A stretch of DNA of 64,000 nucleotides. Origin: Heterodontus francisci (lineage: Eukaryota). Shown here piece by piece: positions 8,655 through 35,916 of this stretch. The DNA is taken from the NCBI RefSeq assembly GCF_036365525.1, contig NC_090395.1:65559326-65623325 (forward strand), read 5' to 3'. The position numbers and the translations under genes are program-made. Under the pieces are notes generated by a model, which was not told the DNA's origin, made no database searches, and worked only from the letters and a program-made list of their open reading frames with translations. The first letter of the stretch is position 1. Every line of letters starts with the position of its first letter.

Positions 8655-8885
8655 ATCTCTGAATCAGTAGATTTTGAGTTCAATTCCCACTCCAGAGAGC
8701 TGAGCATGAAATCTAGCCTGAATACCAGTGCAGTACAGATGGAGTGCTGCACTGTTGGAGGTACTGTCTTTCAGATGAATCATTAAACTGAGACCCTCAC
8801 TGCCCTCTCAGGTGGATGTAAAGTTTCCAATATAACTATTTTGAAGTAGAGCAGGGAAATTCTCCCCAGTGTCCTGCCCAACATT
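8655..8885 (+). mobile_element. DeuSINE/SacSINE1-like remnant
   Basis: Deu-domain-like CTGTCTTTCAGATGA..TAAACTGAG..TGCCCTCTCAGGTGGATGTAAA..GAAGTAGAGCAGGG..CCAGTGTCCTG; related copy at 45700-45989. Confidence 0.7.
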
Positions 8886-9165
8886 TGGGAAGGGAAGATT
8901 CAGGAACTTGTAGATAGACCAATGAGCAGGACCTTGAGAATAATAAACGCAGGATTATTCCCAGTGACACATGGTCTTCTCTATAAGAATAGTAAGATAA
9001 GGGAAGTAATTCTCTGGCTGGAGAGATGGCTCAGAAGAAAAGGCTTTGGATTCCTGCCACATCGGGGTCAATTCTGGATGAACAAAGGAACAAAGAACAA
9101 AGAAAATTACAGCACAGGAACAGGCCCTTCGGCCCTCCAAGCCTGCGCCGATCCAGATCCTCTAT

Positions 9166-12123
9166 CTAAACATGTCGCCTATTTTCTAAGGGTCTGTATC
9201 TCTTTTCTTCCTGCCCATTCATGTATCTGTCTAGATACATCTTAAAAGACGCCATCGTGCCCGCATCTACCACCTCCGCTGGCAACGCGTTCCAGGCACC
9301 CACCACCCTCTGCGTAAAGAACTTTCCACGCATATCCCCCCTAAACTTTTCCCCTTTCACTTTGAACTCGTGTCCTCTAGTAATTGAATCCCCCACTCTG
9401 GGAAAAAGCCTCTTGCTATCCACCCTGTCTATACCTCTCATGATTTTGTACACCTCAATCAGGTCCCCCCTCAACCTCCGCCTTTCTAATGAAAATAATC
9501 CTAATCTACTCAACCTCTCTTCATAGCTAGCGCCCTCCATACCAGGCAACATTCTGGTGAACCTCCTCTGCACCCTCTCCAAAGCATCCACATCCTTTTG
9601 GTAATGTGGCGACCAGAACTGCACGCAGTATTCCAAATGTGGCCGAACCAAAGTCCTATACAACTGTAACATGACCTGCCAACTCTTGTACTCAATACCC
9701 CGTCCGATGAAGGAAAACATGCCGTATGCCTTCTTGACCACTCTATTGACCTGCGTTGCCACCTTCAGGGAACAATGGACCTGAACACCCAAATCTCTCT
9801 GGACATCAATTTTCCCCAGGACTTTTCCATTTACTGTATAGTTCACTCTTGAATTGGATCTTCCAAAATGCATCACCTCGCATTTGCCCTGATTGAACTC
9901 CATCTGCCATTTCTCTGCCCAACTCTCCAATCTATCTATATTCTGCTGTATTCTCTGACAGTCCCCTTCACTATCTGCTACTCCACCAATCTTAGTGTCG
10001 TCTGCAAACTTGCTAATCAGTCCACCTATACTTTCCTCCAAATCATTAATGTATATCACAAACAACAGTGGTCCCAGCACGGATCCCTGTGGAACACCAC
10101 TGGTCACACGTCTCCATTTTGAGAAACTCCCTTCCACTGCTACTCTCTGTCTCCTGTTGCCCAGCCAGTTCTTTATCCATCTAGCTAGTACACCTTGGAC
10201 CCCATGCGCCTTCACTTTCTCCATCAGCCTGCCATGGGGAACCTTATCAAACTCCTTACTGAAGTCCATGTATATGACATCGACAGCCCTTCCCTCATCA
10301 ATCAACTTTGTCACTTCCTCAAAGAATTCTATTAAGTTGGTAAGACATGACCTTCCCTGCACAAAACCATGTTGCCTATCACTGATGAGCCCATTTTCTT
10401 CCAAATGGGAATAGATCCTATCCCTCAGTATCTTCTCCAGCAGCTTCCCTACCACTGACGTCAGGCTCACCGGTCTATAATTACCTGGATTATCCCTGCT
10501 ACCCTTCTTAAACAAGGGGACAACATTAGCAATTCTCCAGTCCTCCGGGACCTCACCCGTGTTTAAGGATGCTGCAAAGATATCTGTTAAGGCCCCAGCT
10601 ATTTCCTCTCTCGCTTCCCTCAGTAACCTGGGATAGATCCCATCCGGACCTGGGGACTTGTCCACCTTAATGCCCTTTAGAATACCCAACACTTCCTCCC
10701 TCCTTATGCCGACTTGACCCAGAGTAATCAAACATCTGTTCCGAACCTCAACATCCGTCATGTCCATCTCCTCGGTGAATACCGATGCAAAGTACTCGTT
10801 TAGAATCTCACCCATTTTCTCTGACTCCAAGCATAACATTCCTCCTTTGTCCTTTAGTGGGCCAATCCTTTCTCTAGTTACCCTCTTGCTCCTTATATAT
10901 GAATAAAAGGCTTTGGGATTTTCTTTAACCCTGTTTGCTAAAGATATTTCATGACCCCTTTTAGCCCTCTTAATTCCTCGTTTCAGATTGGTCCTACATT
11001 CCCGATATTCTTTCAAAGCTTCGTCTTTCATCAGCCGCCTAGACCTTATGTATGCTTCCTTTTTCCTCTTAGCTAGTCTCACAATTTCACCTGTCATCCA
11101 TGGTTCCCTAATCTTGCCATTTCTGTCCCTCATTTTCACAGGAACATGTCTCTCCTGCACGCTAATCAACCTCTCTTTAAAAGCCTCCCACATATCACAT
11201 GTGGATTTACCTTCAAAGAGCTGCTCCCAATCTACATTCCCCAGCTCCTGCCAAATTTTGGTATAGTTGGACTTCCCCCAATTTAGCACTCTTCCTTTAG
11301 GACCACTCTCGTCTTTGTCCATGAGTATTTTAAAGCTTACGGAATTGTGATCACTATTCCCAAAGTAGTCCCCTACTGAAACTTCAAACACCTGGCCGGG
11401 CTCATTCCCCAACACCAGGTCCAGTATGGCCCCTTCCCGAGTTGGACTATTTACATACTGCTCTAGAAAACCCTCCTGGATGCTCCTTACAAATTCTGCT
11501 CCATCTAGACCTCTAACACTAAGTGAATCCCAGTCAATGTTGGGAAAATTAAAATTTCCTATCACCACCACCCTGTTGCTCCTACATCTTTCCATAATCT
11601 GTTTACATATTTGTACCTCTATCTCACGCTCGCTGTTGGGAGGCCTGTAGTACAGCCCCAACATTGTTACCGCACCCTTCCTATTTCTGAGTTCTGTCCA
11701 TATTGCCTCACTGCTCGAGTCCTCCATAGTGCCCTCCTTCAGCACAGCTGTGATATCCTCTTTGACCAGTAATGCAACTCCTCCACCCCTTTTACCTCCC
11801 TCTCTATCCCGCCTGAAGCATCGATATCCTGGGATATTTAGTTGCCAATCATGCCCTTCCCTCAACCAAGTCTCAGTAATAGCAATAACATCATACTCCC
11901 AGGTACTAATCCAAGCCCTAAGTTCATCTGCCTTACCTACTACACTTCTTGCATTAAAACAAATGCACCTCAGACCACCAGTCCCTTTACATTCATCATC
12001 TGCTCCCTGCCTACTCTTCCCCTTAGTCACACTGATTTCATTATCTAGTTCCTTACAAGCTTTTGTTACTACCTCCTTACTGTCAACTGACCTCCTCAAT
12101 TGGTTCCCATCCCCCTGCCACAT
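9166..12123 (-). CDS. CR1 ORF2: APE endonuclease plus reverse transcriptase, 985 aa, uninterrupted
   Basis: EN motifs NARS, ITETW, YRPP, GNFN (canonical GDFN), LDL, SDH; RT motifs PGPDG, NYRPVSLTS, QHGF, GVPQGSVLGP, FADD; CR1 C-terminus RRRLRGDLIEVYK. Confidence 0.96.
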   Translation of the reverse strand: MWQGDGNQLRRSVDSKEVVTKACKELDNEISVTKGKSRQGADDECKGTGGLRCICFNARSVVGKADELRAWISTWEYDVIAITETWLREGHDWQLNIPGYRCFRRDREGGKRGGGVALLVKEDITAVLKEGTMEDSSSEAIWTELRNRKGAVTMLGLYYRPPNSEREIEVQICKQIMERCRSNRVVVIGNFNFPNIDWDSLSVRGLDGAEFVRSIQEGFLEQYVNSPTREGAILDLVLGNEPGQVFEVSVGDYFGNSDHNSVSFKILMDKDESGPKGRVLNWGKSNYTKIWQELGNVDWEQLFEGKSTCDMWEAFKERLISVQERHVPVKMRDRNGKIREPWMTGEIVRLAKRKKEAYIRSRRLMKDEALKEYRECRTNLKRGIKRAKRGHEISLANRVKENPKAFYSYIRSKRVTRERIGPLKDKGGMLCLESEKMGEILNEYFASVFTEEMDMTDVEVRNRCLITLGQVGIRREEVLGILKGIKVDKSPGPDGIYPRLLREAREEIAGALTDIFAASLNTGEVPEDWRIANVVPLFKKGSRDNPGNYRPVSLTSVVGKLLEKILRDRIYSHLEENGLISDRQHGFVQGRSCLTNLIEFFEEVTKLIDEGRAVDVIYMDFSKEFDKVPHGRLMEKVKAHGVQGVLARWIKNWLGNRRQRVAVEGSFSKWRRVTSGVPQGSVLGPLLFVIYINDLEESIGGLISKFADDTKIGGVADSEGDCQRIQQNIDRLESWAEKWQMEFNQGKCEVMHFGRSNSRVNYTVNGKVLGKIDVQRDLGVQVHCSLKVATQVNRVVKKAYGMFSFIGRGIEYKSWQVMLQLYRTLVRPHLEYCVQFWSPHYQKDVDALERVQRRFTRMLPGMEGASYEERLSRLGLFSLERRRLRGDLIEVYKIMRGIDRVDSKRLFPRVGDSITRGHEFKVKGEKFRGDMRGKFFTQRVVGAWNALPAEVVDAGTMASFKMYLDRYMNGQEEKRYRPLENRRHV

Positions 12124-13070
12124 TAGTTTAAACCCTCCCCAACAGCGTTAGCAAAAACACCCCCAAGGACATTGGTTCCAGTCCGGCCCAGGTGTAGACC
12201 GTCCAATTTGTAATAGTCCCACCTCCCCCAGAACCGGTCCCAATGTCCCAAAAATCTGAACCCCTCCTTCCTGCACCATCTCTCAAGCCACGCATTCATC
12301 CTGACTATTCTTTCATTTTTACTCTGACTATCACGTGGCACTGGTAGCAATCCTGAGATTACTACCTCTGAAGTCCTACTTTTTAACTTGGCTCCTAACT
12401 CCCTAAACTCTGCTTGTAGGACCTCATCCCGTTTTTTACCTATATCATTGGTGCCTATGTGCACAACGACAGCTGGCTGTTCACCCTCCCCCTTTAGAAT
12501 GTTCTGCAGCCAATCTGAGACATCCCTGACCCGTGCACCTGGGAGGCAACATACCATTCGGGAGTCTCGTTTTCGACCACAGAACCGCCTATCTACTCCC
12601 CTTACAATCGAATCCCCTACGACTATAGCCCTTCCACTCTTTTTCCCGCCCTTCTGAACAGCAGAGCCAGCCACGGTGCCATGAACCTGGCTACTGCTGC
12701 CTTCCCCTGGTGAGCCATCTCCCTCAACAGTAACCAAAACGGTATACTTGTTTTGGAGGGAGATGACCGCAGGGGACTCCTGCGCTGCCTTCCTGCTCTT
12801 TCTCTGCCTTTTGGTCACCCATTCCCTTTCTCCCTCAGCAATCCTAATCTGCGGTGTGACCAATTCACTAAACGTGCTATCCACGACCTCCTCAGCATCG
12901 CGCATGCTCCAAAGTGAGTCCATCCGCAGCTCGAGAGCCGTCATGCGGTCTAACAATAGCTGCAGTTGGACACACTTCCTGCACATGAAGGAGTCACGGA
13001 CATCAGCCGTGTCCCTGAGCTCCCACATTGAGCAAGAGGAGCATGACACGGGTCTGAGATCTCCTGCCAT
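12123..13070 (-). CDS. CR1 ORF1: zinc knuckle/leucine zipper plus SGNH esterase, 315 aa from the ATG at 13070
   Basis: CSSCSMW..CRKC, heptad leucines, VVGDSIVR, CLPGA, HIGTND, DGLHL; stop overlaps the ORF2 start as TAATG (12125-12121). Confidence 0.93.
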   Translation of the reverse strand: MAGDLRPVSCSSCSMWELRDTADVRDSFMCRKCVQLQLLLDRMTALELRMDSLWSMRDAEEVVDSTFSELVTPQIRIAEGEREWVTKRQRKSRKAAQESPAVISLQNKYTVLVTVEGDGSPGEGSSSQVHGTVAGSAVQKGGKKSGRAIVVGDSIVRGVDRRFCGRKRDSRMVCCLPGARVRDVSDWLQNILKGEGEQPAVVVHIGTNDIGKKRDEVLQAEFRELGAKLKSRTSEVVISGLLPVPRDSQSKNERIVRMNAWLERWCRKEGFRFLGHWDRFWGRWDYYKLDGLHLGRTGTNVLGGVFANAVGEGLN

Positions 13071-13248
13071 TTTTAATCTTAAGCTTAACTTAGTTAAATG
13101 AAAAAGGAATGAAAAGTTTTTTACCAATCACGATAAAACCAGAGAAATAGAAAAAGCCTTACCTTATATGCACACCAACGAGTCCTTTTTTTTGGTTAGA
13201 GGAGGAGGGCGGGTGGGAGACACTACAAGTGTGGTGTATCGGGTTCAG

Positions 13249-16200
13249 AAACCGCCCAAATATATAGTGTTTTACTTACCCAGCAGCCCCCTGGCCTCCG
13301 CCGAAAACAAAAGGAAATTAAGTTTACTTTCAAACTGACCATCCCAGCTGCTCACTCGCTCGCACTCTCTGCTCCCGAAAAAGCTGCTGCAATGAAAGGA
13401 AAGTTATTTTAAACCGCCCAAATATATAGTGTTTTACTTACCCAGCAGCCCCCTGGCCTCCGCCGAAAACAAAAGGAAATTAAGTTTACTTTCAAACTGA
13501 CCTTCCCAGCTGCTCACTCGCTCGCACTCTCTGCTCCCGAAAAAGCTGCTGCAATGAAAGGAAAGTTATTTTAAACCGCCCAAATATATAGTGTTTTACT
13601 TACCCAGCAGCCCCCTGGCCTCCGCCAAAGACAAAAGGAAATTAAGTTTACTTTCAAACTGACCTTCCCAGCTGCTCACTCGCTCGCACTCTCTGCTCCC
13701 GAAAAAGCTGCTGCAATGAAAGGAAAGTTATTTTAAACCGCCCAAATATATAGTGTTTTACTTACCCAGCAGCCCCCTGGCCTCCGCCGAAAACAAAAGG
13801 AAATTAAGTTTACTTTCAAACTGACCTTCCCAGCTGCTCACTCGCTTGCACTCTCTGCTCCCGAAAAAGCTGCTGCAATGAAAGGAAAGTTATTTTAAAC
13901 CGCCCAAATATATAGTGTTTTACTTACCCAGCAGTCCCCTGGCCTCCGCCGAAAACAAAAGGAAATTAAGTTTACTTTCAAACTGACCTTCCCAGCTGCT
14001 CACTCGCTCGCACTTTTTGCTCCCGAAAAAGCTGCTGCAATGAAAGGAAAGTTATTTTAAACCGCCCAAATATATAGTGTTTTACTTACCCAGCAGCCCC
14101 CTGGCCTCCGCCGAAAACAAAAGGAAATTAAGTTTACTTTCAAACTGACCTTCCCAGCTGCTCACTCGCTCGCACTCTCTGCTCCCGGAAAAGCTGCTGC
14201 AATGAAAGGAAAGTTATTTTAAACCGCCCAAATATATAGTGTTTTACTTACACAGCAGCCCCCTGGCCTCCGCCGAAAACAAAAGGAAATTAAGTTTACT
14301 TTCAAACTGACCTTCCCAGCTGCTCACTCGCTCGCACTCTCTGCTCCCGAAAAAGCTGCTGCAATGAAAGGAAAGTTATTTTAAACTGCCCAAATATATG
14401 GTGTTTTACTTACCCAGCAGTCCCCTGGCCTCCGCCGAAAACAAAAGGAAATTAAGTTTACTTTCAAACTGACCTTCCCAGCTGCTCACTCGCTCGCACT
14501 CTCTGCTCCCGAAAAAGCTGCTGCAATGAAAGGAAAGTTATTTTAAACCACCCAAATATATAGTGTTTTACTTACCCAGCAGCCCCCTGGCCTCCGCCGA
14601 AAACAAAAGGAAATTAAGTTTACTTTCAAACTGACCATCCCAGATGCTCACACGCTCGCACTCTCCTGCTCCCGAAAAAGCTGCTGCAATGAAAGGAAAG
14701 TTATTTTAAACTGCCCAAATATATAGTGTTTTACTTACCCAGCAGCCCCCTGGCCTCCGCCGAAAACAAAAGGATATGAAGTTTACTTTCAAACTGACCT
14801 TCCCAGCTGCTCACTCGCTTGCACTCTCTTGCTCCCGAAAAAGCTGCTGCAATGAAAGGAAAGTTATTTTAAACCGCCCAAATATATAGTGTTTTACTTA
14901 CCCAGCAGCCCCCTGGCCTCCGCTGAAAACAAAAGGAAATTAAGTTTACTTTCAAACTGACCTTCCCAGCTGCTCACTCGCTCGCACACTCTGCTCCCGA
15001 AAAAGCTGCTGCAATGAAAGGAAAGTTATTTTAAACCGCCCAAAAATATAGTGTTTTACTTACCCAGCAGCCCCCTGGCCTCCACCAAAAACAAAAGGAA
15101 ATTAAGTTTACTTTCAAACTGACCTTCCCAGCGGCTCACTCGCTCGCACTCTCTGCTCCCGAAAATGCTGCTGCAATGAAAGGAAAGTTATTTTAAACCA
15201 CCCAAATATATAGTGTTTTACTTCCCCAGCAGCCCCCTGGCCTCCGCCAAAAACAAAAGGAAATTAAGTTTACTTTCAAACTGACCTTCCCAGCTGCTCA
15301 CTCGCTCGCACTCTCTGCTCCCGAAAAAGCTGCTGCAATGATAGGAAAGTTATTTTAAACCGCCCAAATATATAGTGTTTTACTTACCCAGCAGCCCCCT
15401 GGCCTCTGCCGAAAACAAAAGGAAATTAAGTTTACTTTCAAACTGACCTTCCCAGCTGCTCACTCGCTCGCACTCTCTGCTCTCGAAAAAGCTGCTGCAA
15501 TGAAAGGAAAGTTATTTTAAACCGCCCAAATACATAGTGTTTTACTTACCCAGCAGCCCCCTGGGCTCCGCCGAAAACAAAAGGAAATTATTTTACTTTC
15601 AAACTGACCTTCCCAGCTGCTCACTCGCTCGCACTCTCTGCTCCCGAAAAAGCTGCTGCAATGAAAGGAAAGTTATTTTAAACCGCCCAAATATATAGTG
15701 TTTTACTTACCCAGCAGTCCCCTGGCCTCTGCCGAAAACAAAAGGAAATTAAGTTTACTTTCAAACTGACCTTCCCAGCTGCTCACTCGCTTGCACTCTC
15801 TGCTCCCGAAAAAGCTGCTGCAATGAAAGGAAAGTTATTTTAAACCGCCCAAATATATAGTGTTTTACTTACCCAGCAGCCCCCTGGCCTCTGCCGAAAA
15901 CAAAAGGAAATTAAGTTTACTTTCAAACTGACCTTCCCAGCTGCTCACTCGCTCGCACTCTCTGCTCCCGAAAAAGCTGCTGCAATGAAAGGAAAGTTAT
16001 TTTAAACCGCCCAAATATATAGTGTTTTACTTACCCAGCAGCCCCCTGGCCTCTGCCGAAAACAAAAGGATATGAAGTTTACTTTCAAACTGACCTTCCC
16101 AGCTAATCACTCGCTTGCACTCTCTTGCTCCCGAAAAAGCTGCTGCAATGAAAGGAAAGTTGTTTTAAACCGCCCAAATATATAGTGTTTCACTTACCCA

Positions 16201-19200
16201 GCAGCCCCCTGGCCTCCGCCGAAAACAAAAGGAAATTAAGTTTACTTTCAAACTGACCTTCCCAGCTGCTCACTTGCTCGCAATCTCTGCTCCCGAAAAA
16301 GCTGCTGCAATGAAAGGAAAGTTATTTTAAACCGCCCAAATATATAGTGTTTTACTTACCCAGCAGCCCCCTGGGCTCCGCCGAAAACAAAAGGAAATTA
16401 AGTTTACTTTCAAACTGACCTTCCCAGCTGCTCACTCGCTCGCACTCTCTGCTCCCGAAAAAGCTGCTGCAATGAAAGGAAAGTTATTTTAAACCGCCCA
16501 AATATATAATGTTTTACTTACCCAGCAGCCCCCTGGCCTCCGCCGAAAACAAAAGGAAATTAAGTTTACTTTCAAACTGACCTTCCCAGCTGCTCACTCG
16601 CTCGCACTCTCTGCTCCCGAAAAAGCTGCTGCAATGAAAGGAAAGTTATTTTAAACCACCCAAATATATAGTGTTTTACTTACCCAGCAGCCCCCTGGCC
16701 TCTGCCGAAAACAAAAGGAAATTAAGTTTACTTTCAAACTGACCTTCCCAGCTGCTCACTCGCTCGCACTCTCTGCTCTCGAAAAAGCTGCTGCAATGAA
16801 AGGAAAGTTATTTTAAACCGCCCAAATACATAGTGTTTTACTTACCCAGCAGCCCCCTGGGCTCCGCCGAAAACAAAAGGAAATTATTTTACTTTCAAAC
16901 TGACCTTCCCAGCTGCTCACTCGCTCGCACTCTCTGCTCCCGAAAAAGCTGCTGCAATGAAAGGAAAGTTATTTTAAACCGCCCAAATATATAGTGTTTT
17001 ACTTACCCAGCAGCCCCCTGGCCTCTGCCGAAAACAAAAGGATATGAAGTTTACTTTCAAACTGACCTTCCCAGCTAATCACTCGCTTGCACTCTCTTGC
17101 TCCCGAAAAAGCTGCTGCAATGAAAGGAAAGTTATTTTAAACCGCCCAAATATATAGTGTTTTACTTACCCAGCAGCCCCCTGGCCTCCGCCGAAAACAA
17201 AAGGAAATTAAGTTTACTTTCAAACTGACCTTCCCAGCTGCTCACTCGCTCGCACTCTCTGCTCCCGAAAAAGCTGCTGCAATGAAAGGAAAGTTATTTT
17301 AAACCGCCCAAATATATAGTGTTTTACTTACCCAGCAGTCCCCTGGCCTCCGCCGAAAACAAAAGGAAATTAAGTTTACTTTCAAACTGACCATCCCAGC
17401 TGCTCACTCGCTCGCACACTCTGCTCCCGAAAAAGCTGCTGCAATGAAAGGAAAGTTATTTTAAACCGCCCAAATATATAATGTTTTACTTACCCAGCAG
17501 CCCCCTGGCCTCCGCCGAAAACAAAAGGAAATTAAGTTTACTTTCAAACTGACCTTCCCAGCTGCTCACTCGCTCGCACTCTCTGCTCCCGAAAAAGCTG
17601 CTGCAATGAAAGGAAAGTTATTTTAAACTGCCCAAATATATAGTGTTTTACTTACCCAGCAGCCCCCTGGCCTCCGCTGAAAACAAAAGGAAATTAAGTT
17701 TACTTTCAGACTGACCTTCCCAGCTGCTCACTCGCTCGCACTCTCTGCTCTCGAAAAAGCTGCTGCAATGAAAGGAAAGTTATTTTAAACCGCCCAAATA
17801 CATAGTGTTTTACTTACCCAGCAGCCCCCTGGGCTCCGCCGAAAACAAAAGGAAATTATTTTACTTTCAAACTGACCTTCCCAGCTGCTCACTCGCTCGC
17901 ACTCTCTGCTCCCGAAAAAGCTGCTGCAATGAAAGGAAAGTTATTTTAAACCGCCCAAATATATAGTGTTTTACTTACCCAGCAGTCCCCTGGCCTCCGC
18001 CGAAAACAAAAGGAAATTAAGTTTACTTTCAAACTGACCTTCCCAGCTGCTCACTCGCTTGCACTCTCTGCTCCCTAAAAAGCTGCTGCAATGAAAGGAA
18101 AGTTATTTTAAACCGCCCAAATATATAGTGTTTTACTTACCCAGCAGCCCCCTGGCCTCCGCCGAAAACAAAAGGAAATTAAGTTTACTTTCAAACTGAC
18201 CTTCCCAGCTGCTCACTCGCTCGCACTCTCTGCTCCCGAAAAAGCTGCTGCAATGAAAGGAAAGTTATTTTAAACCGCCCAAATATATAGTATTTTACTT
18301 ACCCAGCAGCCCCCTGGCCTCTGCCGAAAACAAAAGGATATGAAGTTTACTTTCAAACTGACCTTCCCAGCTAATCACTCGCTTGCACTCTCTTGCTCCC
18401 GAAAAAGCTGCTGCAATGAAAGGAAAGTTATTTAAACCGCCCAAATATATAGTGTTTTACTTACCCAGCAGCCCCCTGGCCTCCGCCGAAAACAAAAGGA
18501 AATTAAGTTTACTTTCAAACTGACCTTCCCAGCTGGTCACTCGCTCGCACTCTCTGCTCCCGAAAAAGCTGCTGCAATGAAAGGAAAGTTATTTTAAACC
18601 GCCCAAATATATAGTGTTTTACTTACCCAGCAGTCCCCTGGCCTCCGCCGAAAACAAAAGGAAATTAAGTTTACTTTCAAACTGACCATCCCAGCTGCTC
18701 ACTCGCTCGCACTCTCTGCTCCCGAAAAAGCTGCTGCAATGAAAGGAAAGTTATTTTAAACCGCCCAAATATATAATGTTTTACTTACCCAGCAGCCCCC
18801 TGGCCTCCGCCGAAAACAAAAGGAAATTAAGTTTACTTTCAAACTGACCTTCCCAGCTGCTCACTCGCTCGCACTCTCTGCTCCCGAAAAAGCTGCTGCA
18901 ATGAAAGGAAAGTTATTTTAAACCGCCCAAATATATAGTGTTTTACTTACCCAGCAGCCCCCTGGCCTCTGCCGAAAACAAAAGGAAATTAAGTTTACTT
19001 TCAAACTGACCTTCCCAGCTGCTCACTCGCTCGCACTCTCTGCTCCCGAAAAAGCTGCTGCAATGAAAGGAAAGTTATTTTAAACCGCCCAAATATATAG
19101 TGTTTTACTTACCCAGCAGCCCCCTGGCCTCTGCCGCAAACAAAAGGAAATTAAGTTTACTTTCAAACTGACCTTCCCACCTGCTCACTCGCTCGCACTC

Positions 19201-25200: not shown

Positions 25201-28200
25201 TCCCGAAAAAGCTGCTGCAATGAAAGGAAAGTTATTTTAAACCGCCCAAATATATAGTGTTTTACTTACCCAGCAGCCCCCTGGCCTCCGCCGAAAACAA
25301 AAGGAAACTAAGTTTACTTTCAAACTGACCTTCCCAGCTGCTCAGTCACTCGCACTCTCTGCTCCCGAAAAAGCTGCTGCAATGAAAGGAAAGTTATTTT
25401 AAACTGCCCAAATATATAGTGCTTTACTTTCCCAGCAGCCCCCTGGCCTCCGCCGAAAACAAAAGGAAATTAAGTTTCCTTTCAAACTGACCTTCCCAGC
25501 TGCTCACTCGCTCGCACTCTCTGCTCCCGAAAAAGCTGCTGCAATGAAAGGAAAGTTATTTTAAACCGCCCAAATATATAGTGTTTTACTTACCCAGCAG
25601 CCCCCTGGCCTCCGCCGAAAACAAAAGGAAATTAAGTTTACTTTCAAACTGACCTTCCCAGCTGCTCACTCGCTCGCACTCTCTGCTCCCGAAAAAGCTG
25701 CTGCAATGAAAGGAAAGTTATTTTAAACTGCCCAGATATATAGTGTTTTACTTACCCAGCAGCCCCCTGGCCTCCGCCGAAAACAAAAGGAAATTAAGTT
25801 TACTTTCAAACTGACCTTCCCAGCTGCTCACTCGCTCGCACTCTCTGCTCCCGAAAAAGCTGCTGCAATGAAAGGAAAGTTATTTTAAACTGCCCAAATA
25901 TATAGTGTTTTACTTACCCAGCAGCCCCCTGGCCTCTGCCAAAAACAAAAGGAAATTAAGTTTACTTTCAAACTGACCTTCCCAGCTGCTCACTCGCTCG
26001 CACTCTCTGCTCCCGAAAAAGCAACTGCAATGAAAGGAAAGTTATTTTAAACCGCCCAAATATATAGTGTTTTACTTACCCAGCAGCCCCCTGGCCTTCA
26101 CTGAAAACAAATGGAAATTAAGTTTACTATCAAACTGACCTTCCCAGCTGCTCACTCGCTCGCACGCTCTGCTCCCGAAAAAGCTGCTGCAATGAAAGGA
26201 AAGTTATTTTAAACCGCCCAAATATATAGTGTTTTACTTACCCAGCAGCCCCCTGGCCTCCGCCGAAAACAAAAGGAAATTAAGTTTACTTTCAAACTGA
26301 CCTTCCCAGCTGCTCACTCGCTCACACTCTCTGCTCCCGAAAAAGCTGCTGCAATGAAAGGAAAGTTATTTTAAACTGCCCAAATATATCGTGTTTTACT
26401 TAGCCAGCAGCCCCCTGGCCTCTGCCAAAAACAAAAGGAAATTAAGTTTACTTTCAAACTGACCTTCCCAGCTGCTCACTCGCTCGCACTCTCTGCTCCC
26501 GAACAAGCTGCTGCAATGAAAGGAAAGTTATTTTAAACCGCCCAAATATAGAGTGTTTTACTTACCCAGCAGCCCCCTGGCCTCCGCCGAAAACAAAAGG
26601 AAATTAAGTTTACTTTCAAACTGACCTTCCCAGCTGCTCAGTCGCTCGCACTCTCTGCTCCCGAAAAAGCTGCTGCAATGAAAGGAAAGTTATTTTAAAC
26701 TGCCCAAATATATAGTGCTTTACTTTCCCAGCAGCCCCCTGGCCTCCGCCGAAAACAAAAGGAAATTAAGTTTCCTTTCAAACTGACCTTCCCAGCTGCT
26801 CACTCGCTCGCACTCTCTGCTCCCGAAAAAGCTGCTGCAATGAAAGGAAAGTTATTTTAAACCACCCAAATATATAGTGTTTTACTTACCCAGCAGCCCC
26901 CTGGCCTCCGCCGAAAACAAAAGGAAATTAAGTTTACTTTCAAACTGACCTTCCCAGCTGCTCACTCGCTCGCACTCTCTGCTCCCGAAAAAGCTGCTGC
27001 AATGAAAGGAAAGTTATTTTAAACTGCCCAGATATATAGTGTTTTACTTACCCAGCAGCCCCCTGGCCTCCGCCGAAAACAAAAGGAAATTAAGTTTACT
27101 TTCAAACTGACCTTCCCAGCTGCTCACTCGCTCGCACTCTCTGCTCCCGAAAAAGCTGCTGCAATGAAAGGAAAGTTATTTTAAACTGCCCAAATATATA
27201 GTGTTTTACTTACCCAGCAGCCCCCTGGCCTCTGCCAAAAACAAAAGGAAATTAAGTTTACTTTCAAACTGACCTTCCCAGCTGCTCACTCGCTCGCACT
27301 CTCTGCTCCCGAAAAAGCAACTGCAATGAAAGGAAAGTTATTTTAAACCGCCCAAATATATAGTGTTTTACTTACCCAGCAGCCCCCTGGCCTTCACTGA
27401 AAACAAATGGAAATTAAGTTTACTATCAAACTGACCTTCCCAGCTGCTCACTCGCTCGCACGCTCTGCTCCCGAAAAAGCTGCTGCAATGAAAGGAAAGT
27501 TATTTTAAACCGCCCAAATATATAGTGTTTTACTTACCCAGCAGCCCCCTGGCCTCCGCCGAAAACAAAAGGAAATTAAGTTTACTTTCAAACTGACCTT
27601 CCCAGCTGCTCACTCGCTCACACTCTCTGCTCCCGAAAAAGCTGCTGCAATGAAAGGAAAGTTATTTTAAACTGCCCAAATATATCGTGTTTTACTTAGC
27701 CAGCAGCCCCCTGGCCTCTGCCAAAAACAAAAGGAAATTAAGTTTACTTTCAAACTGACCTTCCCAGCTGCTCACTCGCTCGCACTCTCTGCTCCCGAAC
27801 AAGCTGCTGCAATGAAAGGAAAGTTATTTTAAACCGCCCAAATATAGAGTGTTTTACTTACCCAGCAGCCCCCTGGCCTCCGCCAAAAACAAAAGGAAAT
27901 TAAGTTTACTTTCAAACTGACCTTCCCAGCTGCTCACTCGCTCGCACTCTCTGCTCCCGAAAAAGCTGCTGCAATGAAAGGAAAGTTATTTTAAACCGCC
28001 CAAATATATAGTGTTATACTTACCCAGCAGCCCCCTGGCCTCCACCGAAAACAAAAGGAAATTAAGTTTACTTTCAAACTGACCTTCCCAGCTGCTCACT
28101 CGCTCGCACTCTCTGCTCCCGAAAAAGCTGCTGCAATGAAAGGAAAGTTATTTTAAACCGCCCAAATATATCATGTTTTACTTACCCAGCAGCCCCCTGG

Positions 28201-31200
28201 CCTCTGCCGAAAACAAAAGGAAATTAAGTTTACTTTCAAACTGACCTTCCCAGCTGCTCACTCGCTCGCACTCACTGCTCCCGAAAAAGCTGCTGCAATG
28301 AAAGGAAAGTTATTTTAAACCGCCCAAATATATAGTGTTTTACTTACCCAGCAGCCCCCTGGCCTCCGCCGAAAACAAAAGGAAACTAAGTTTACTTTCA
28401 AACTGACCTTCCCAGCTGCTCAGTCGCTCGCACTCTCTGCTCCCGAAAAAGCTGCTGCAATGAAAGGAAAGTTATTTTAAACCGCCCAAGTATATAGTGC
28501 TTTACTTACCCAGCAGCCCCCTGGCCTCTGCCGAAAACAAAAGGAAATTAAGTTTCCTTTCAAACTGACCTTCCCAGCTGCTCACTCGCTCGCACTCTCT
28601 GCTCCCGAAAAAGCTGCTGCAGTGAAAGGAAAGTTATTTTAAACCGCCCAAATATATAGTGTTTTACTTACCCAGCAGCCCCCTGGCCTCCGCCAAAAAC
28701 AAAAGGAAATTAAGTTTACTTTCAAACTGACCTTCCCAGCTGCTCACTCGCTCGCACTCTCTGCTCCCGAAAATGCTGCTGCAATGAAAGGAAAGTTATT
28801 TTAAACCGCCCAAATATATAGTGTTTTACTTACCCAGCAGCCCCCTGGCCACCACCAAAAACAAAAGGAAATTAAGTTTACTTTCAAACTGACCTTCCCA
28901 GCTGCTCACTCGCTCGCACTCTCTGCTCCCGAAAAAGCTGCTGCAATGAAAGGAAAGTTATTTTAAACTGCCCAAATATATCGTGTTTTACTTACCCAGC
29001 AGCCCCCTGGCCTCTGCCAAAAACAAAAGGAAATTAAGTTTACTTTCAAACTGACCTTCCCAGCTGCTCACTCGCTCGCACTCTCTGCTCCCGAACAAGC
29101 TGCTGCAATGAAAGGAAAGTTATTTTAAACTGCCCAAATATAGAGTGTTTTACTTACCCAGCAGCCCCCTGGCCTCCGCCGAAAACAAAAGGAAATTAAG
29201 TTTACTTTCAAACTGACCTTCCCAGCTGCTCACTCGCTCGCACTCTCTGCTCCCGAAAAAGCTGCTGCAATGAAAGGAAAGTTATTTTAAACCGCCCAAA
29301 TATATAGTGTTATACTTACCCAGCAGCCCCCTGGCCTCCACCGAAAACAAAAGGAAATTAAGTTTACTTTCAAACTGACCTTCCCAGCTGCTCACTCGCT
29401 CGCACTCTCTGCTCCCGAAAAAGCTGCTGCAATGAAAGGAAAGTTATTTTAAACCGCCCAAATATATCATGTTTTACTTACCCAGCAGCCCCCTGGCCTC
29501 TGCCGAAAACAAAAGGAAATTAAGTTTACTTTCAAACTGACCTTCCCAGCTGCTCACTCGCTCGCACTCACTGCTCCCGAAAAAGCTGCTGCAATGAAAG
29601 GAAAGTTATTTTAAACCGCCCAAATATATAGTGTTTTACTTACCCAGCAGCCCCCTGGCCTCCGCCGAAAACAAAAGGAAACTAAGTTTACTTTCAAACT
29701 GACCTTCCCAGCTGCTCAGTCGCTCGCACTCTCTGCTCCCGAAAAAGCTGCTGCAATGAAAGGAAAGTTATTTTAAACCGCCCAAGTATATAGTGCTTTA
29801 CTTACCCAGCAGCCCCCTGGCCTCCGCCGAAAACAAAAGGAAATTAAGTTTCCTTTCAAACTGACCTTCCCAGCTGCTCACTCGCTCGCACTCTCTGCTC
29901 CCGAAAAAGCTGCTGCAGTGAAAGGAAAGTTATTTTAAACCACCCAAATATATAGTGTTTTACTTACCCAGCAGCCCCCTGGCCTCCGCCGAAAACAAAA
30001 GGAAATTAAGTTTACTTTCAAACTGACCTTCCCAGCTGCTCACTCGCTCGCACTCTCTGCTCCCGAAAATGCTGCTGCAATGAAAGGAAAGTTATTTTAA
30101 ACCGCCCAAATATATAGTGTTTTACTTACCCAGCAGCCCCCTGGCCACCACCAAAAACAAAAGGAAATTAAGTTTACTTTCAAACTGACCTTCCCAGCTG
30201 CTCACTCGCTCGCACTCTCTGCTCCCGAAAAAGCTGCTGCAATGAAAGGAAAGTTATTTTAAACCGCCCAAATATATCGTGTTTTACTTACCCAGCAGCC
30301 CCCTGGCCTCTGCCGAAAACAAAAGGAAATTAAGTTTACTTTCAAACTGACCTTCCCAGCTGCTCACTCGCTCGCACTCTCTGCTCCCGAAAAAGCTGCT
30401 GCAATGAAAGGAAAGTTATTTTAAACCGCCCAAATATATAGTGTTTTACTTACCCAGCAGCCCCCTGGCCTCCGCCGAAAACAAAAGGAAACTAAGTTTA
30501 CTTTCAAACTGACCTTCCCAGCTGCTCAGTCACTCGCACTCTCTGCTCCCGAAAAAGCTGCTGCAATGAAAGGAAAGTTATTTTAAACTGCCCAAATATA
30601 TAGTGTTTTACTTAACCAGCAGCCCCCTGGCCTCCGCCGAAAACAAATGGAAATTAAGTTTACTTTCAAACTGACCTTCCCAGCTGCTCACTCGCTCGCA
30701 CTCTCTGCTCCCGAAAAAGCTGCTGCAATGAAAGGAAAGTTATTTTAAACCGCCCAAATATATAGTGTTTTACTTACCCAGCAGCCCCCTGGCCTCCGCC
30801 GAAAACAAAAGGAAATTAAGTTTACTTTCAAACTGACCTTCCCAGCTGCTCACTCGCTCGCACTCTCTGCTCCCGAAAAAGCTGCTGCAAGGAAAGGAAA
30901 GTTATTTTAAACCACCCAGATATATAGTGTTTTACTTACCCAGCAGCCCCCGGGCCTCCGCTGAAAACAAAAGGAAATTAAGTTTCCTTTCAAACTGACC
31001 TTCCCAGCTGCTCACTCGCTCGCACTCTCTGCTCCCGAAAAAGCTGCTGCAATGAAAGGAAAGTTATTTTAAACCGCCCAAATATATAGTGTTTTACTTA
31101 CCCAGCAGCCCCCTGGCCTCTGCCTAAAACAAAAGGAAATTAAGTTTATTTTCAAACTGACCTTCCCAGCCGCTCACTCGCTCGCACTCTCTTCTCCCGA

Positions 31201-34200
31201 AAAATCTGCTGCAATGAAAGGAAAGTTATTTTAAACCGCCCAAATATATAGTGTTTTACTTACCCAGCAGCCCCCTGGCCTCCACCGAAAACAAAAGGAA
31301 ATTAAGTTTACTTTCAAACTGACCTTCCCAGCTGCTCACTCGCTCGCACTCTCTGCTCCCGAAAAAGCTGCTGCAATGAAAGGAAAGTTATTTTAAACCG
31401 CCCAAATATATAGTGTTTTACTTACCCAGCAGCCCCCTGGCCTCCGCCGAAAACAAAAGGAAACTAAGTTTACTTTCAAACTGACCTTCCCAGCTGCTCA
31501 GTCGCTCGCACTCTCTGCTCCCGAAAAAGCTGCTGCAATGAAAGGAAAGTTATTTTAAACTGCCCAAATATATAGTGCTTTACTTACCCAGCAGCCCCCT
31601 GGCCTCCGCCGAAAACAAAAGGAAATTAAGTTTCCTTTCAAACTGACCTTCCCAGCTGCTCACTCGCTCGCACTCTCTGCTCCCGAAAAAGCTGCTGCAA
31701 TGAAAGGAAAGTTATTTTAAACCGCCCAAATATATAGTGTTTTACTTAACCAGCAGCCCCCTGGCCTCCGCCGAAAACAAAAGGAAATTAAGTTTACTTT
31801 CAAACTGACCTTCCCAGCTGCTCACTCGCTCGCACTCTCTGCTCCCGAAAAAGCTGCTGCAATGAAAGGAAAGTTATTTTAAACCGCCCAAATATATAGT
31901 GTTTTACTTACCCAGCAGCCCCCTGGCCTCCGCCGAAAACAAAAGGAAATTAAGTTTACTTTCAAACTGACCTTCCCAGCTGCTCACTCGCTCGCACTCT
32001 CTGCTCCCGAAAAAGCTGCTGCAATGAAAGGAAAGTTATTTTAAACCACCCAGATATATAGTGTTTTACTTACCCAGCAGCCCCCTGGCCTCCGCCGAAA
32101 ACAAAAGGAAATTAAGTTTCCTTTCAAACTGACCTTCCCAGCTGCTCACTCGCTCGCACTCTCTGCTCCCGAAAAAGCTGCTGCAATGAAAGGAAAGTTA
32201 TTTTAAACCGCCCAAATATATAGTGTTTTACTTACCCAGCAGCCCCCTGGCCTCTGCCTAAAACAAAAGGAAATTAAGTTTACTTTCAAACTGACCTTCC
32301 CAGCCGCTCACTCGCTCGCACTCTCTTCTCCCGAAAAAGCTGCTGCAATGAAAGGAAAGTTATTTTAAACCGCCCAAATATATAGTGTTTTACTTACCCA
32401 GCAGCCCCCTGGCCTCCACCGAAAACAAAAGGAAATTAAGTTTACTTTCAAACTGACCTTCCCAGCTGCTCACTCGCTCGCACTCTCTGCTCCCGAAAAA
32501 GCTGCTGCAATGAAAGGAAAGTTATTTTAAACCGCCCAAATATATAGTGTTTTACTTACCCAGCAGCCCCCTGGCCTCCGCCGAAAACAAAAGGAAACTA
32601 AGTTTACTTTCAAACTGACCTTCCCAGCTGCTCAGTCGCTCGCACTCTCTGCTCCCGAAAAAGCTGCTGCAATGAAAGGAAAGTTATTTTAAACCGCCCA
32701 AGTATATAGTGCTTTACTTACCCAGCAGCCCCCTGGCCTCCGCCGAAAACAAAAGGAAATTAAGTTTCCTTTCAAACTGACCTTCCCAGCTGCTCACTCG
32801 CTCGCACTCTCTGCTCCCGAAAAAGCTGCTGCAATGAAAGGAAAGTTATTTTAAACCGCCCAAATATATAGTGTTTTACTTACCCAGCAGCCCCCTGGCC
32901 TCCGCCGAAAACAAAAGGAAATTAAGTTTACTTTCCAACTGACCTTCCCAGCTGCTCACTCGCTCGCACTCTCTGCTCCCGAAAAAGCTGCTGCAATGAA
33001 AGGAAAGTTATTTTAAACCGCCCAAATATATAGTGTTTTACTTACCCAGCAGCCCACCGGCCTCCACCGAAAACAAAAGGAAATTAAGTTTACTTTCAAA
33101 CTGACCTTCCCAGCTGCTCACTCGCTCGCACTCTCTGCTCCCGAAAAAGCTGCTGCAATGAAAGGAAAGTTATTTTAAACCGCCCAAATATATCATGTTT
33201 TACTTACCCAGCAGCCCCCTGGCCTCTGCCGAAAACAAAAGGAAATTAAGTTTACTTTCAAACTGACCTTCCCAGCTGCTCAGTCGCTCGCACTCTCTGC
33301 TCCCGAAAAAGCTGCTGCAATGAAAGGAAAGTTATTTTAAACCGCCCAAGTATATAGTGCTTTACTTACCCAGCAGCCCCCTGGCCTCCGCCGAAAACAA
33401 AAGGAAATTAAGTTTCCTTTCAAACTGACCTTCCCAGCTGCTCACTCGCTCGCACTCTCTGCTCCCGAAAAAGCTGCTGCAGTGAAAGGAAAGTTATTTT
33501 AAACCGCCCAAATATATAGTGTTTTACTTACCCAGCAGCCCCCTGGCCTCCGCCGAAAACAAAAGGAAATTAAGTTTACTTTCAAACTGACCTTCCCAGC
33601 TGCTCACTCGCTCGCACTCTCTGCTCCCGAAAATGCTGCTGCAATGAAAGGAAAGTTATTTTAAACCGCCCAAATATATAGTGTTTTACTTACCCAGCAG
33701 CCCCCTGGCCACCACCAAAAACAAAAGGAAATTAAGTTTACTTTCAAACTGACCTTCCCAGCTGCTCACTCGCTCGCACTCTCTGCTCCCGAAAAAGCTG
33801 CTGCAATGAAAGGAAAGTTATTTTAAACCGCCCAAATATATCGTGTTTTACTTACCCAGCAGCCCCCTGGCCTCTGCCGAAAACAAAAGGAAATTAAGTT
33901 TACTTTCAAACTGACCTTCCCAGCTGCTTACTCGCTCGCACTCTCTGCTCCCGAAAAAGCTGCTGCAATGAAAGGAAAGTTATTTTAAACCGCCCAAATA
34001 TATAGTGTTTTACTTACCCAGCAGCCCCCGGCCTCCGCCGAAAACAAAAGGAAACTAAGTTTACTTTCAAACTGACCTTCCCAGCTGCTCAGTCACTCGC
34101 ACTCTCTGCTCCCGAAAAAGCTGCTGCAATGAAAGGAAAGTTATTTTAAACTGCCCAAATATATAGTGCTTTACTTACCCAGCAGCCCACTGGCCTCCGC

Positions 34201-35916
34201 CGAAAACAAAAGGAAATTAAGTTTCCTTTCAAACTGACCTTCCCAGCTGCTCACTCGCTCGCACTCTCTGCTCCCGAAAAAGCTGCTGCAATGAAAGGAA
34301 AGTTATTTTAAACCGCCCAAATATATAGTGTTTTACTTAACCAGCAGCCCCCTGGCCTCCGCCGAAAACAAAAGGAAATTAAGTTTACTTTCAAACTGAC
34401 CTTCCCAGCTGCTCACTCGCTCGCACTCTCTGCTCCCGAAAAAGCTGCTGCAATGAAAGGAAAGTTATTTTAAACCGCCCAAATATATAGTGTTTTACTT
34501 ACCCAGCAGCCCCCTGGCCTCCGCCGAAAACAAAAGGAAATTAAGTTTACTTTCAAACTGACCTTCCCAGCTGCTCACTCGCTCGCACTCTCTGCTCCCG
34601 AAAAAGCTGCTGCAATGAAAGGAAAGTTATTTTAAACCACCCAGATATATAGTGTTTTACTTACCCAGCAGCCCCCTGGCCTCCGCCGAAAACAAAAGGA
34701 AATTAAGTTTCCTTTCAAACTGACCTTCCCAGCTGCTCACTCGCTCGCACTCTCTGCTCCCGAAAAAGCTGCTGCAATGAAAGGAAAGTTATTTTAAACC
34801 GCCCAAATATATAGTGTTTTACTTACCCAGCAGCCCCCTGGCCTCTGCCTAAAACAAAAGGAAATTAAGTTTATTTTCAAACTGACCTTCCCAGCCGCTC
34901 ACTCGCTCGCACTCTCTTCTCCCGAAAAAGCTGCTGCAATGAAAGGAAAGTTATTTTAAACCGCCCAAATATATAGTGTTTTACTTACCCAGCAGCCCCC
35001 TGGCCTCCACCGAAAACAAAAGGAAATTAAGTTTACTTTCAAACTGACCTTCCCAGCTGCTCACTCGCTCGCACTCTCTGCTCCCGAAAAAGCTGCTGCA
35101 ATGAAAGGAAAGTTATTTTAAACCGCCCAAATATATAGTGTTTTACTTACCCAGCAGCCCCCTGGCCTCCGCCGAAAGCAAAAGGAAACTAAGTTTACTT
35201 TCAAACTGACCTTCCCAGCTGCTCAGTCGCTCGCACTCTCTGCTCCCGAAAAAGCTGCTGCAATGAAAGGAAAGTTATTTTAAACCGCCCAAGTATATAG
35301 TGCTTTACTTACCCAGCAGCCCCCTGGCCTCCGCCGAAAACAAAAGGAAATTAAGTTTCCTTTCAAACTGACCTTCCCAGCTGCTCACTCGCTTGCACTC
35401 TCTGCTCCCGAAAAAGCTGCTGCAATGAAAGGAAAGTTATTTTAAACCGCCCAAATATATAGTGTTTTACTTACCCAGCAGCCCCCTGGCCTCCGCCGAA
35501 AACAAAAGGAAATTAAGTTTACTTTCCAACTGACCTTCCCAGCTGTTCACTCGCTCGCACTCTCTGCTCCCGAAAAAGCTGCTGCAATGAAAGGAAAGTT
35601 ATTTTAAACCGCCCAAATATATAGTGTTTTACTTACCCAGCAGCCCACCGGCCTCCGCCGAAAACAAAAGGAAATTAAGTTTACTTTCAAACTGACCTTC
35701 CCAGCTGCTCACTCGCTCGCACTCTCTGCTCCCGAAACAGCTGCTGCAATGAAAGGAAAGTTATTTTAAACCGCCCAAATATATAGTGTTTTACTTACCC
35801 AGCAGCCCCCTGGCCTCCGCCGAAAACAAAAGGAAATTAAGTTTCCTTTCAAACTGACCTTCCCAGCTGCTCACTCGCTCGCACTCCCTGCTCCCGAAAA
35901 AGCTGCTGCAATGAAA
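13249..35916. repeat. Tandem array of ~140 copies of a 162-bp monomer forming the 5' end of the CR1
   Basis: Unit starts at 13249, 13411, 13573 ... 35768 (22519/162 = 139.0), last unit partial; + consensus AAACCGCCCAAATATATAGTGTTTTACTTACCCAGCAGCCCCCTGGCCTCCGCCGAAAACAAAAGGAAATTAAGTTTACTTTCAAACTGACCTTCCCAGCTGCTCACTCGCTCGCACTCTCTGCTCCCGAAAAAGCTGCTGCAATGAAAGGAAAGTTATTTT; few substitutions per unit. Confidence 0.98.

What the first reader, a model, noticed from the sequence alone, without database searches (positions are those of the whole stretch)
9082..35916. CR1 LINE with both ORFs open whose 5' end is a 22.7-kb array of ~140 x 162-bp monomers
Seen: the array starts ~180 bp upstream of the ORF1 ATG, runs straight out of the unique 5' UTR and ends in a partial monomer at the insertion boundary. 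ATGA is duplicated at both ends, and the flanks rejoin as one older CR1 (..FW|MRSS..). The array is therefore inside the insertion. Known: mouse L1 uses tandem 5' promoter monomers, usually only a few. Inference: this CR1 family has a monomeric 5' module that here expanded into a satellite, so a satellite is being born from a LINE promoter while still attached to its parent ORFs. I do not know of a CR1 case at this scale.
Basis: partly seen in the sequence, partly recalled or inferred. Interest (0 to 1): 0.92.

Follow-up and report, generated by a model that had tools for sequence, protein, structure and literature searches.

The report
Shark CR1 LINE with giant monomer array
An intact shark CR1-type jumping gene carries at its front end 140 tandem copies of a 162-bp promoter-like unit that its relatives carry in only a few copies, so this looks like a satellite repeat growing out of a mobile element's promoter.

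Summary
A minus-strand CR1-type LINE lies at 9082-13248. It has an open ORF1 (315 aa, GDSL esterase) and an open ORF2 (985 aa, endonuclease plus reverse transcriptase). Through a 178-nt unique tether it continues into 140 copies of a 162-bp monomer (13249-35916). ATGA flanks the 26.8-kb block, and the two flanks rejoin in frame as one older plus-strand CR1, so the array lies inside the insertion.

- Public contigs of the same species include at least one that bridges the tether/monomer junction with 10 mismatches, so it comes from another copy.
- Rough summed contig depth gives about two monomers per tether family-wide. Two other species also hold the monomer.
- The insertion starts 31 nt downstream of a TATA box, beside an Initiator-like motif, as expected for a transcription start.
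- Monomer and tether have no sense-strand ATG.
- Blocks of 5-9 monomers recur within the array, which shows growth by segmental duplication, probably in situ.

Promoter activity, the exact array length and the monomer count of individual copies remain untested. The closest parallel is the mouse L1 monomer promoter, whose longest reported array has 50 monomers.

The parts
8883..9077 (+). Left half of the older, decayed CR1 that was the insertion target (ORF1 residues about 217-281)
   Evidence: tblastn against the intact ORF1, 38% identity, E 1e-10. ORF1 profile HMM, 36.1 bits.
9078..9081 (.). Target-site duplication, ATGA, copy at the element's 3' side
   Evidence: Read directly. Keeping one copy restores the old ORF1 frame.
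9082..9102 (-). 3' tail of three heptamer repeats (CTTTGTT-like), no poly(A)
   Evidence: Read directly. Homology of contigs from other copies stops at 9088, so tail length varies between copies (record 17 and loose ends at 9088).
9103..9165 (-). Remaining 3' UTR
   Evidence: Lies between the ORF2 stop (9166) and the tail.
9166..12123 (-). ORF2, 985 aa, open: apurinic-type endonuclease plus reverse transcriptase
   Evidence: Exo_endo_phos 6.7e-16, RVT_1 1.7e-35. The FADD motif is present in the translation.
12123..13070 (-). ORF1, 315 aa, open: Cys-rich N-terminus, coiled-coil-like region, SGNH/GDSL esterase. Its stop overlaps the ORF2 ATG (TAATG).
   Evidence: Best relatives are shark and ray proteins, 73-75% identity to Pristiophorus japonicus.
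13071..13248 (-). Unique 178-nt 5' UTR ('tether'), no ATG, unrelated to the monomer
13249..35916 (-). Array of 140 x 162-bp monomers. In element orientation each has TATATAT (position 145), GGGCGG (154), Initiator-like TCATTG (16), TTGCAG (19) and GGTAAGT (131).
35768..35916 (-). 5'-most monomer, truncated to 149 nt. The insertion starts at monomer phase 14, 31 nt downstream of where the TATA box of an upstream monomer would lie.
35916..35919 (.). Target-site duplication, ATGA, copy at the element's 5' side (its first A could equally belong to the monomer)
35920..36017 (+). Right half of the older CR1: ORF1 tail running to ...LN-stop
   Evidence: The profile alignment crosses the junction, and there are 33 codons after FW against 34 in the intact ORF1.
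36251..36325 (+). Older CR1, ORF2 endonuclease N-terminal motif (residues 77-101)
   Evidence: tblastn 52% identity, E 1e-5, at the spacing expected from the intact element.

Best explanation
A CR1-type LINE family of this shark has a bipartite 5' UTR like that of mouse L1. Tandem 162-bp monomers sit upstream of a unique 178-nt tether.

Each monomer carries a TATA box and a GC box. Together these would place RNA polymerase II initiation about 31 nt downstream, at an Initiator-like TCATTG in the next monomer (inferred).

One full-length transcript that began at such a site was reverse-transcribed into an older CR1. That event produced the 4-bp ATGA duplication (shown: boundaries, duplication, flank rejoin). 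It probably brought in only a few monomers, because the family average looks like about two (rough, from summed depth).

The monomers then multiplied to 140 copies by repeated unequal exchange or replication slippage of blocks of 5-17 monomers (shown: block duplications; inferred: that they happened at this locus). The array was methylated and lost CpGs (shown: CpG sites change 6.6 times as often as other sites).

The result is a 22.7-kb array of nucleosome-sized units, satellite-like and still joined to an element with two open reading frames.
For: **One insertion.** ATGA flanks the block. The old ORF1 rejoins in frame across the junction, and the old ORF2 motif follows at the right distance.

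**Family module.**
- An X9 contig of 151 nt spans 13172-13321 (77 nt of tether plus 73 nt of monomer) with 10 mismatches and depth 1018, so it comes from other copies.
- 44-55 X1 contigs carry the family-majority letters at 13233 and 13238 and reach 35-40 nt beyond those positions, which is up to about 30 nt into the monomer.
- Summed depth is about 0.42-0.43 million on the monomer against 0.20 million on the tether. It declines from 1.9 million at the 3' end, as expected for 5'-truncated LINEs.
- Monomer variants are also present in organisms B and C.

**Start site.** The insertion begins at monomer phase 14, 31 nt after the first T of TATATAT and 2-4 nt before the A of TCATTG. A second contig (X9 record 31) stops matching at phase about 147 of the plus-strand monomer, against 149 here, and continues into 319 unmatched letters. 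This fits another copy starting at the same place (a single record).

**Leader.** There is no sense-strand ATG in the monomer consensus or the tether (P about 0.0015 by shuffling). The antisense strand has 4.

**Local growth.**
- Runs of 5-9 consecutive monomers recur with at most 1 difference each at lags 8, 16, 21, 22 and 29. Only 5% of random monomer pairs are that close.
- None of the 140 monomers has the extra A after 13303. That variant makes up 22-43% of family monomer depth and is the only form seen at that site in B and C.

**Parallel.** Mouse L1 monomer arrays vary in number and reach 50 copies.
Against: - The monomer number per copy therefore rests on summed contig depth, which the tool itself warns is not a copy number.
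- Promoter function is inferred from motifs only. 28 of 140 monomers have lost the exact TATATAT and 33 the GC box, so most of the array is evolving neutrally.
- X9 is only guessed to be RNA, and its 5' end is under-represented relative to DNA. There is no evidence of transcription from the monomers.
- The timing of the expansion relative to the insertion is not resolved.
- The array length comes from one assembly.
Confidence: 0.7

Rival explanations
1. Satellite first. The 162-bp unit is an independent satellite. A CR1 source copy lay just downstream of such an array, a read-through transcript carried some units along (5' transduction), and the units are not a working part of the family.
For: LINEs can carry flanking DNA along (review). 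The unit has typical satellite size (150-180 bp). The tether and the monomer share no similarity, so the monomer was acquired from elsewhere at some point.
Against: - The tether/monomer junction recurs in diverged copies, and the monomer is found with the element in three species.
- Monomer depth is only about twice tether depth, not orders of magnitude more.
- The unit lacks ATG on the sense strand only.
- The insertion starts at a TATA-defined position.

An ancient transduction that was then kept by the family is the same as the best explanation.
Confidence: 0.1
2. The array was already about 140 monomers long at the source locus, and the whole 26.8 kb was copied in a single retrotransposition.
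For: The 5' end lies at the predicted start site and the block has a single target duplication. Nothing in the sequence itself dates the block duplications relative to the insertion.
Against: - A 27-kb LINE copy is far beyond the usual length, and this family shows a clear loss of 5' sequence with distance (tenfold depth decline over 4 kb).
- Only 40 singleton variants occur in 22.7 kb, and there are 1-kb exact repeats. This points to very recent, ongoing duplication.
Confidence: 0.07
3. Assembly artefact. The element and some monomers are real, but the length or order of the array is wrong.
For: Tandem arrays are error-prone in assembly. Only contigs, not long reads, could be laid on the stretch.
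Against: - Both unique junctions are coherent and the flanks rejoin.
- The longest exact internal repeat is 1020 bp, and every 2-kb window of the array is unique. Reads of 10 kb or more can therefore place it.
- The variants form a non-periodic barcode with CpG-decay signatures typical of real DNA.
Confidence: 0.08
4. Two unrelated events landed by chance at one site. A monomer-bearing element or repeat inserted into the old CR1, and the intact CR1 later inserted exactly at its edge.
For: TE-dense region with nested insertions.
Against: - It needs the young CR1's 3' end to abut exactly the old breakpoint, with one shared 4-bp duplication.
- It does not explain the same tether/monomer junction in other copies.
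Confidence: 0.03

Closest known systems
Mouse and rat L1 (L1Md A, Gf, Tf) monomeric 5' UTR
   Same: - Head-to-tail monomers sit at the extreme 5' end.
- A unique tether separates them from ORF1.
- The outermost monomer is truncated.
- Monomers are CpG-bearing and methylation-prone.
- Monomer number varies by duplication, usually 2-3, with rare very long outliers (50 monomers, 11.3 kb) (PMC6454616, PMC5381506).
   Different: - A different LINE clade: CR1-type with an esterase ORF1 and a heptamer-repeat tail, not L1 with poly(A).
- The unit is 162 bp against about 200 bp.
- The architecture is TATA plus Initiator-like rather than YY1-centred.
- This array is about three times the longest reported mouse case.
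- Promoter activity is untested here.
Chicken CR1 5' UTR promoters (for example CR1-H)
   Same: CR1-clade element whose 5' UTR acts as an internal promoter with the start site at its 5' end (bioRxiv 10.64898/2026.03.19.712899).
   Different: The passages I read of that paper describe no monomer structure in the chicken 5' UTR. The tandem array in that case (LL2R) lies downstream and is unrelated to the element.
Satellites derived from transposable elements (chicken HinfI and Cen satellites from CR1, PisTR-A from the Ogre 3' UTR, cetacean satellite from L1, Helitron central repeats)
   Same: A short tandem stretch within or beside a mobile element is amplified by unequal exchange into long arrays of roughly 150-180-bp units (reviews PMC6947457, PMC9659126).
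   Different: - In the LINE examples those reviews list, the source is an ORF or the 3' UTR, and the satellite is usually already detached.
- Here the source is the 5' monomer.
- The array is still attached to an element with both ORFs open.
- No free-standing arrays are shown.

Membership tests
CR1-clade LINE | ORF2 with an N-terminal apurinic-type endonuclease and a reverse transcriptase | tested here: met
   Pfam Exo_endo_phos 6.7e-16 and RVT_1 1.7e-35.
CR1-clade LINE | ORF1 of the CR1-like type with an SGNH/GDSL esterase domain (my own knowledge: Kapitonov and Jurka 2003) | tested here: met
   Lipase_GDSL_2 9.4e-14. Homologues are widespread in sharks and rays.
CR1-clade LINE | 3' end without poly(A), ending in a few short direct repeats; short or no target duplication | tested here: met
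   Three heptamers at 9082-9102 and a 4-bp duplication. Tail length varies among copies.
CR1-clade LINE | Reverse transcriptase groups with CR1 rather than L2 or Rex1 in a tree | not tested
   No named reference sequences were at hand. 'CR1-type' is therefore used in the broad sense (CR1/L2 group).
Monomeric LINE promoter (L1Md type) | Tandem monomers at the 5' end, separated from ORF1 by a non-repeated tether | tested here: met
Monomeric LINE promoter (L1Md type) | The same monomer/tether arrangement in other copies of the family, with variable monomer number | tested here: inconclusive
   A junction-bridging contig from another copy and a monomer:tether depth ratio of about 2. No whole second copy could be read.
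Monomeric LINE promoter (L1Md type) | Transcription starts inside monomers, so the outermost monomer is truncated at the start site | tested here: inconclusive
   The 5' end lies 31 nt downstream of a TATA position, next to an Initiator-like motif. One other contig ends at nearly the same phase. There are no start-site data.
Monomeric LINE promoter (L1Md type) | Monomers have promoter activity | not testable with these tools
   Needs reporter assays or CAGE.
Satellite DNA | Long homogeneous tandem array of units of about 150-180 bp, shaped by unequal exchange | tested here: met
   22.7 kb, 96.7% pairwise identity, block duplications.
Satellite DNA | Exists as independent arrays at one or more loci, detached from the parent element | tested here: inconclusive
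   Depth argues against a large independent satellite, but no genome-wide map was available.

The most novel reading that the evidence does not exclude
The monomer is a captured host-gene 5' end that the CR1 family adopted and made tandem. Read in sense, it consists of a TATA box, then 31 nt to a start site, then a non-coding 'first exon' of about 117 nt without ATG, then a consensus splice donor GGTAAGT. This gave a CR1 lineage in several sharks an L1Md-like, self-renewing promoter by convergence. At this locus that promoter is turning into a satellite of 140 promoter/splice-donor cassettes next to an immune-receptor gene cluster.
Probability: 0.15. Interest if true: 0.8.

Novelty: new variant of a known kind. 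Interest (0 to 1): 0.62.

Why it matters
Tandem promoter monomers are the textbook peculiarity of rodent L1. They are thought to let a LINE that loses 5' sequence at each copying step rebuild its promoter by duplication.

Finding the same layout in a CR1-type element of sharks, with a different TATA/Initiator logic, would show that this solution arose independently in a distant LINE clade and a distant vertebrate.

The locus also shows an early step of satellite birth with the parent still attached. The founder unit, the duplication blocks and the boundary of the original insertion are all readable, which is rarely the case.

There is a practical point as well. Repeat annotation would split this into 'satellite' plus 'LINE' and miss the connection.

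Tried and rejected
**Searches for further copies (all empty)**
- Exact scans for a 21-nt monomer core in metagenome, prokaryote-genome and viral contigs found nothing.
- ORF1-based locus scans of metagenome and genome contigs found nothing.
- The ORF1 protein search gave no relative above 75% identity, so this family itself is absent from that protein collection.

**Negative checks on the sequence**
- The monomer is not related to the tether, the element body or anything else in the window.
- There is no Rfam family or tRNA in the element, tether or monomers.
- The array has only a weak overall period-8/16 signal. Its structure is local block duplication, not a regular higher-order repeat.

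**Splicing between monomers**
- The motifs are well kept (GGTAAGT in 128 of 140 monomers, TTGCAG in 137 of 140).
- The one monomer-internal joint seen in X9 (13285 to 13366) has non-canonical ends. Splicing is therefore unsupported, though not excluded.

**Expression**
- X9 is only guessed to be RNA, and its profile looks like passive signal from truncated copies. I make no claim of expression.

**Literature**
- Searches found no report of monomeric 5' ends in CR1 or L2 elements. A blank there is not proof of absence.


Full report
**Observation.**
- Tandem Repeats Finder reports a single array at 13249-35916 with period 162, 139.9 copies and 96% matches.
- Splitting on an anchor motif gives 140 units spaced 161-163 bp, the last one 149 nt long. 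Mean identity between units is 96.7%.
- Just below the array, on the minus strand, lie two open reading frames. ORF1 runs from the ATG at 13070 to 12123 (315 aa). ORF2 runs from 12123 to 9166 (985 aa). The ORF1 stop overlaps the ORF2 start as TAATG.
- Pfam finds a GDSL/SGNH esterase in ORF1, and an apurinic-type endonuclease plus a reverse transcriptase in ORF2.
- The element ends in three heptamer repeats at 9082-9102, without poly(A).
- ORF1's closest relatives are shark and ray proteins, at most 75% identical. Notes of this scan also call the genome a shark.
- Between the ORF1 ATG and the array lie 178 nt with no similarity to the monomer.

**Is the array inside the insertion? Yes.**
- ATGA occurs at 9078-9081 and at 35916-35919.
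- The left flank (8883-9077, plus strand) encodes residues 217-281 of a diverged CR1 ORF1 (E 1e-10).
- When the flanks are joined with exactly one ATGA, an ORF1 profile built from 42 homologues aligns across the junction (36.1 to 39.6 bits). The frame then continues for 33 codons to ...LN-stop. The intact ORF1 has 34 codons there and ends the same way.
- An endonuclease motif (ORF2 residues 77-101) follows at 36251-36325, about 335 bp past the junction. The intact element predicts about 330 bp.
- With zero or two copies of ATGA the frame would break. The 26.8-kb block therefore interrupts one older plus-strand CR1 at one point.

The evidence comes from laying public contigs on 8900-13500.
- In a DNA run of the same species (X1), 44,488 contigs match. 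Summed depth falls from about 1.9 million at the 3' end to about 0.2 million on the tether. That is the usual 5'-truncation gradient of a very abundant LINE.
- On the monomer the summed depth is 0.42-0.43 million, about twice that of the tether. The neighbouring flank bin has depth 15. The tool warns that these sums are not copy numbers. Taken roughly, they imply on the order of ten thousand tether-bearing copies with about two monomers each. This array's 140 units would be well under 1% of all monomers.
- A 151-nt contig of run X9 spans 13172-13321 across the tether/monomer junction with 10 mismatches. It comes from other copies, and it probably carries the family-majority letters.
- In X1, 44-55 contigs carry the majority letters at 13233 and 13238 and extend 35-40 nt either side of those positions.
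- Runs of two other species (organisms B and C) also hold the tether and the monomer. They include a monomer variant with an extra A after 13303.

**Monomer anatomy, read in element orientation.**
- The motifs are TCATTG (Initiator-like) at position 16, TTGCAG at 19, GGTAAGT at 131, TATATAT at 145 and GGGCGG at 154.
- The insertion begins at phase 14. That is 31 nt after the first T of the TATA box a preceding monomer would supply, and 2-4 nt before the A of TCATTG.
- From general knowledge of TATA-dependent promoters, 30-31 nt is the canonical distance from TATA to the start site. The truncated outermost monomer is therefore what a full-length copy of an RNA initiated in a monomer should look like.
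- The same spacing from the innermost monomer points to a CA about 13-14 nt into the tether.
- A further X9 contig stops matching at nearly the same monomer phase and continues into 319 unmatched letters. This hints at another copy with the same 5' end. It is a single record, so it is only suggestive.
- Neither the monomer consensus nor the tether contains an ATG on the sense strand, whereas the antisense strand has four. Shuffling gives P of about 0.0015. This fits a leader that must be scanned to reach the ORF1 ATG.
- The monomer is 46% GC with CpG observed/expected of 0.78.

**How the array grew.**
- Variant barcodes show runs of 5-9 consecutive monomers repeated with at most one difference per monomer. 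Examples are monomers 76-82 and 84-90, 114-122 and 130-138, and 67-73 and 88-94. Only 5% of random monomer pairs are that similar.
- A distinctive monomer type recurs at positions 18, 24, 32 and 49.
- The array holds 102 variant types, of which 40 are singletons.
- None of the 140 units has the extra A after 13303 that is common elsewhere in the family.
- The array thus descends from one or a few founder units by repeated multi-monomer duplication, as in unequal exchange.
- CpG positions have changed 6.6 times as often per site as other positions, almost all as C>T or G>A. This is the mark of germline methylation, and a sign that the sequence is real and has some age.
- The longest exact internal repeat is 1020 bp, and every 2-kb window is unique. 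Long reads could therefore assemble it. I could not check the length with reads, because the single read-laying run returned contigs only.

**Mechanism, with its status.**
- Shown: the boundaries, the single insertion, the block duplications, the CpG decay, and the recurrence of the junction in other copies and species.
- Inferred: that the monomers are the promoter, that the original insertion had few monomers, and that the expansion happened here afterwards.
- The rivals are a transduced independent satellite, a pre-expanded array copied whole, an assembly error in length, and two chance events at one site. They are listed with their tests, and together I give them about 0.28.

**Comparison with what is known.**
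- The closest system is the rodent L1 5' UTR: tandem monomers, a tether, a truncated outer monomer and variable monomer number. The usual number is 2-3, and one reported outlier has 50 monomers over 11.3 kb (PMC6454616; PMC5381506).
- Chicken CR1 uses its 5' UTR as a promoter. The passages I read of that paper describe no monomers in it.
- Satellites derived from mobile elements are well documented. The LINE examples listed in two reviews come from ORFs or 3' UTRs.
- Four literature searches found no CR1 or L2 element with 5' monomers. This is a limited negative.
- I therefore class the finding as a new variant of a known kind: an L1Md-like monomer promoter in a CR1-type LINE, with an extreme local expansion.
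- Assignment to CR1 in the strict sense, as against L2, was not tested by a tree.

**Earlier notes of this scan.**
- Another first-stage note (s1-872085, unchecked) reports a CR1 with a tandem-monomer 5' end starting at an Initiator on another piece of this genome. It agrees with my reading but is not independent evidence.
- A note on this same array (s1-872529) reads the monomer as a splice-signal cassette. I confirm that the motifs are there and are well kept, but I found no support for splicing.

Noticed in passing
window 12126-12132 (minus strand), just before the ORF1 stop at 12125-12123: The heptamer T_TTA_AAC lies in the ORF1 frame immediately before the stop, and ORF2 is in the -1 frame (TAATG overlap). 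This fits the candidate -1 frameshift site that other notes of this scan report for CR1 copies (s1-873611, s1-872053).
   Followed up: no
window 13249-35916, element (minus) orientation: Each monomer keeps a consensus splice donor (GGTAAGT, 128 of 140) and an acceptor-like pyrimidine tract ending in TTGCAG (137 of 140). The tether has a further donor-like AAGGTAAGG. No canonical spliced joint was seen in the contigs.
   Followed up: partly
window 7080-7703 (minus strand): Open frame with an immunoglobulin V-set domain (Pfam 1.9e-08), about 1.4 kb from the insertion's 3' side. The block sits in an Ig-like receptor gene region that another note describes at 50677-59573.
   Followed up: no
window 632-1864 (-), 41029-41715 (-), 62131-62471 (-): Further decayed LINE reverse-transcriptase fragments, 65-70% identical at DNA level to the intact element where that was measured. 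The region is dense in old CR1-type copies.
   Followed up: partly
window 8900-13500 as laid on runs X5 and X6: In organism B, ORF1 is hundreds to thousands of times deeper than most of ORF2, which suggests a family that shares ORF1 but not ORF2. Organism C holds contigs about 99% identical to this element at very low depth. Neither pattern is explained.
   Followed up: no
window 9088 and 11423, 12238 (table 5c): Contigs join a 5'-truncated copy directly to the 3' tail of another copy with 2-7 letters between them. This suggests head-to-tail pile-ups or insertion into the tail repeats of earlier copies.
   Followed up: no
window 53584-54447: Purine- or pyrimidine-rich low-complexity repeats (GGAGGGG-type, then CCCTCC-type) were reported by Tandem Repeats Finder. 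There is an assembly gap or masked run at 51567-51864, which I left untouched.
   Followed up: no
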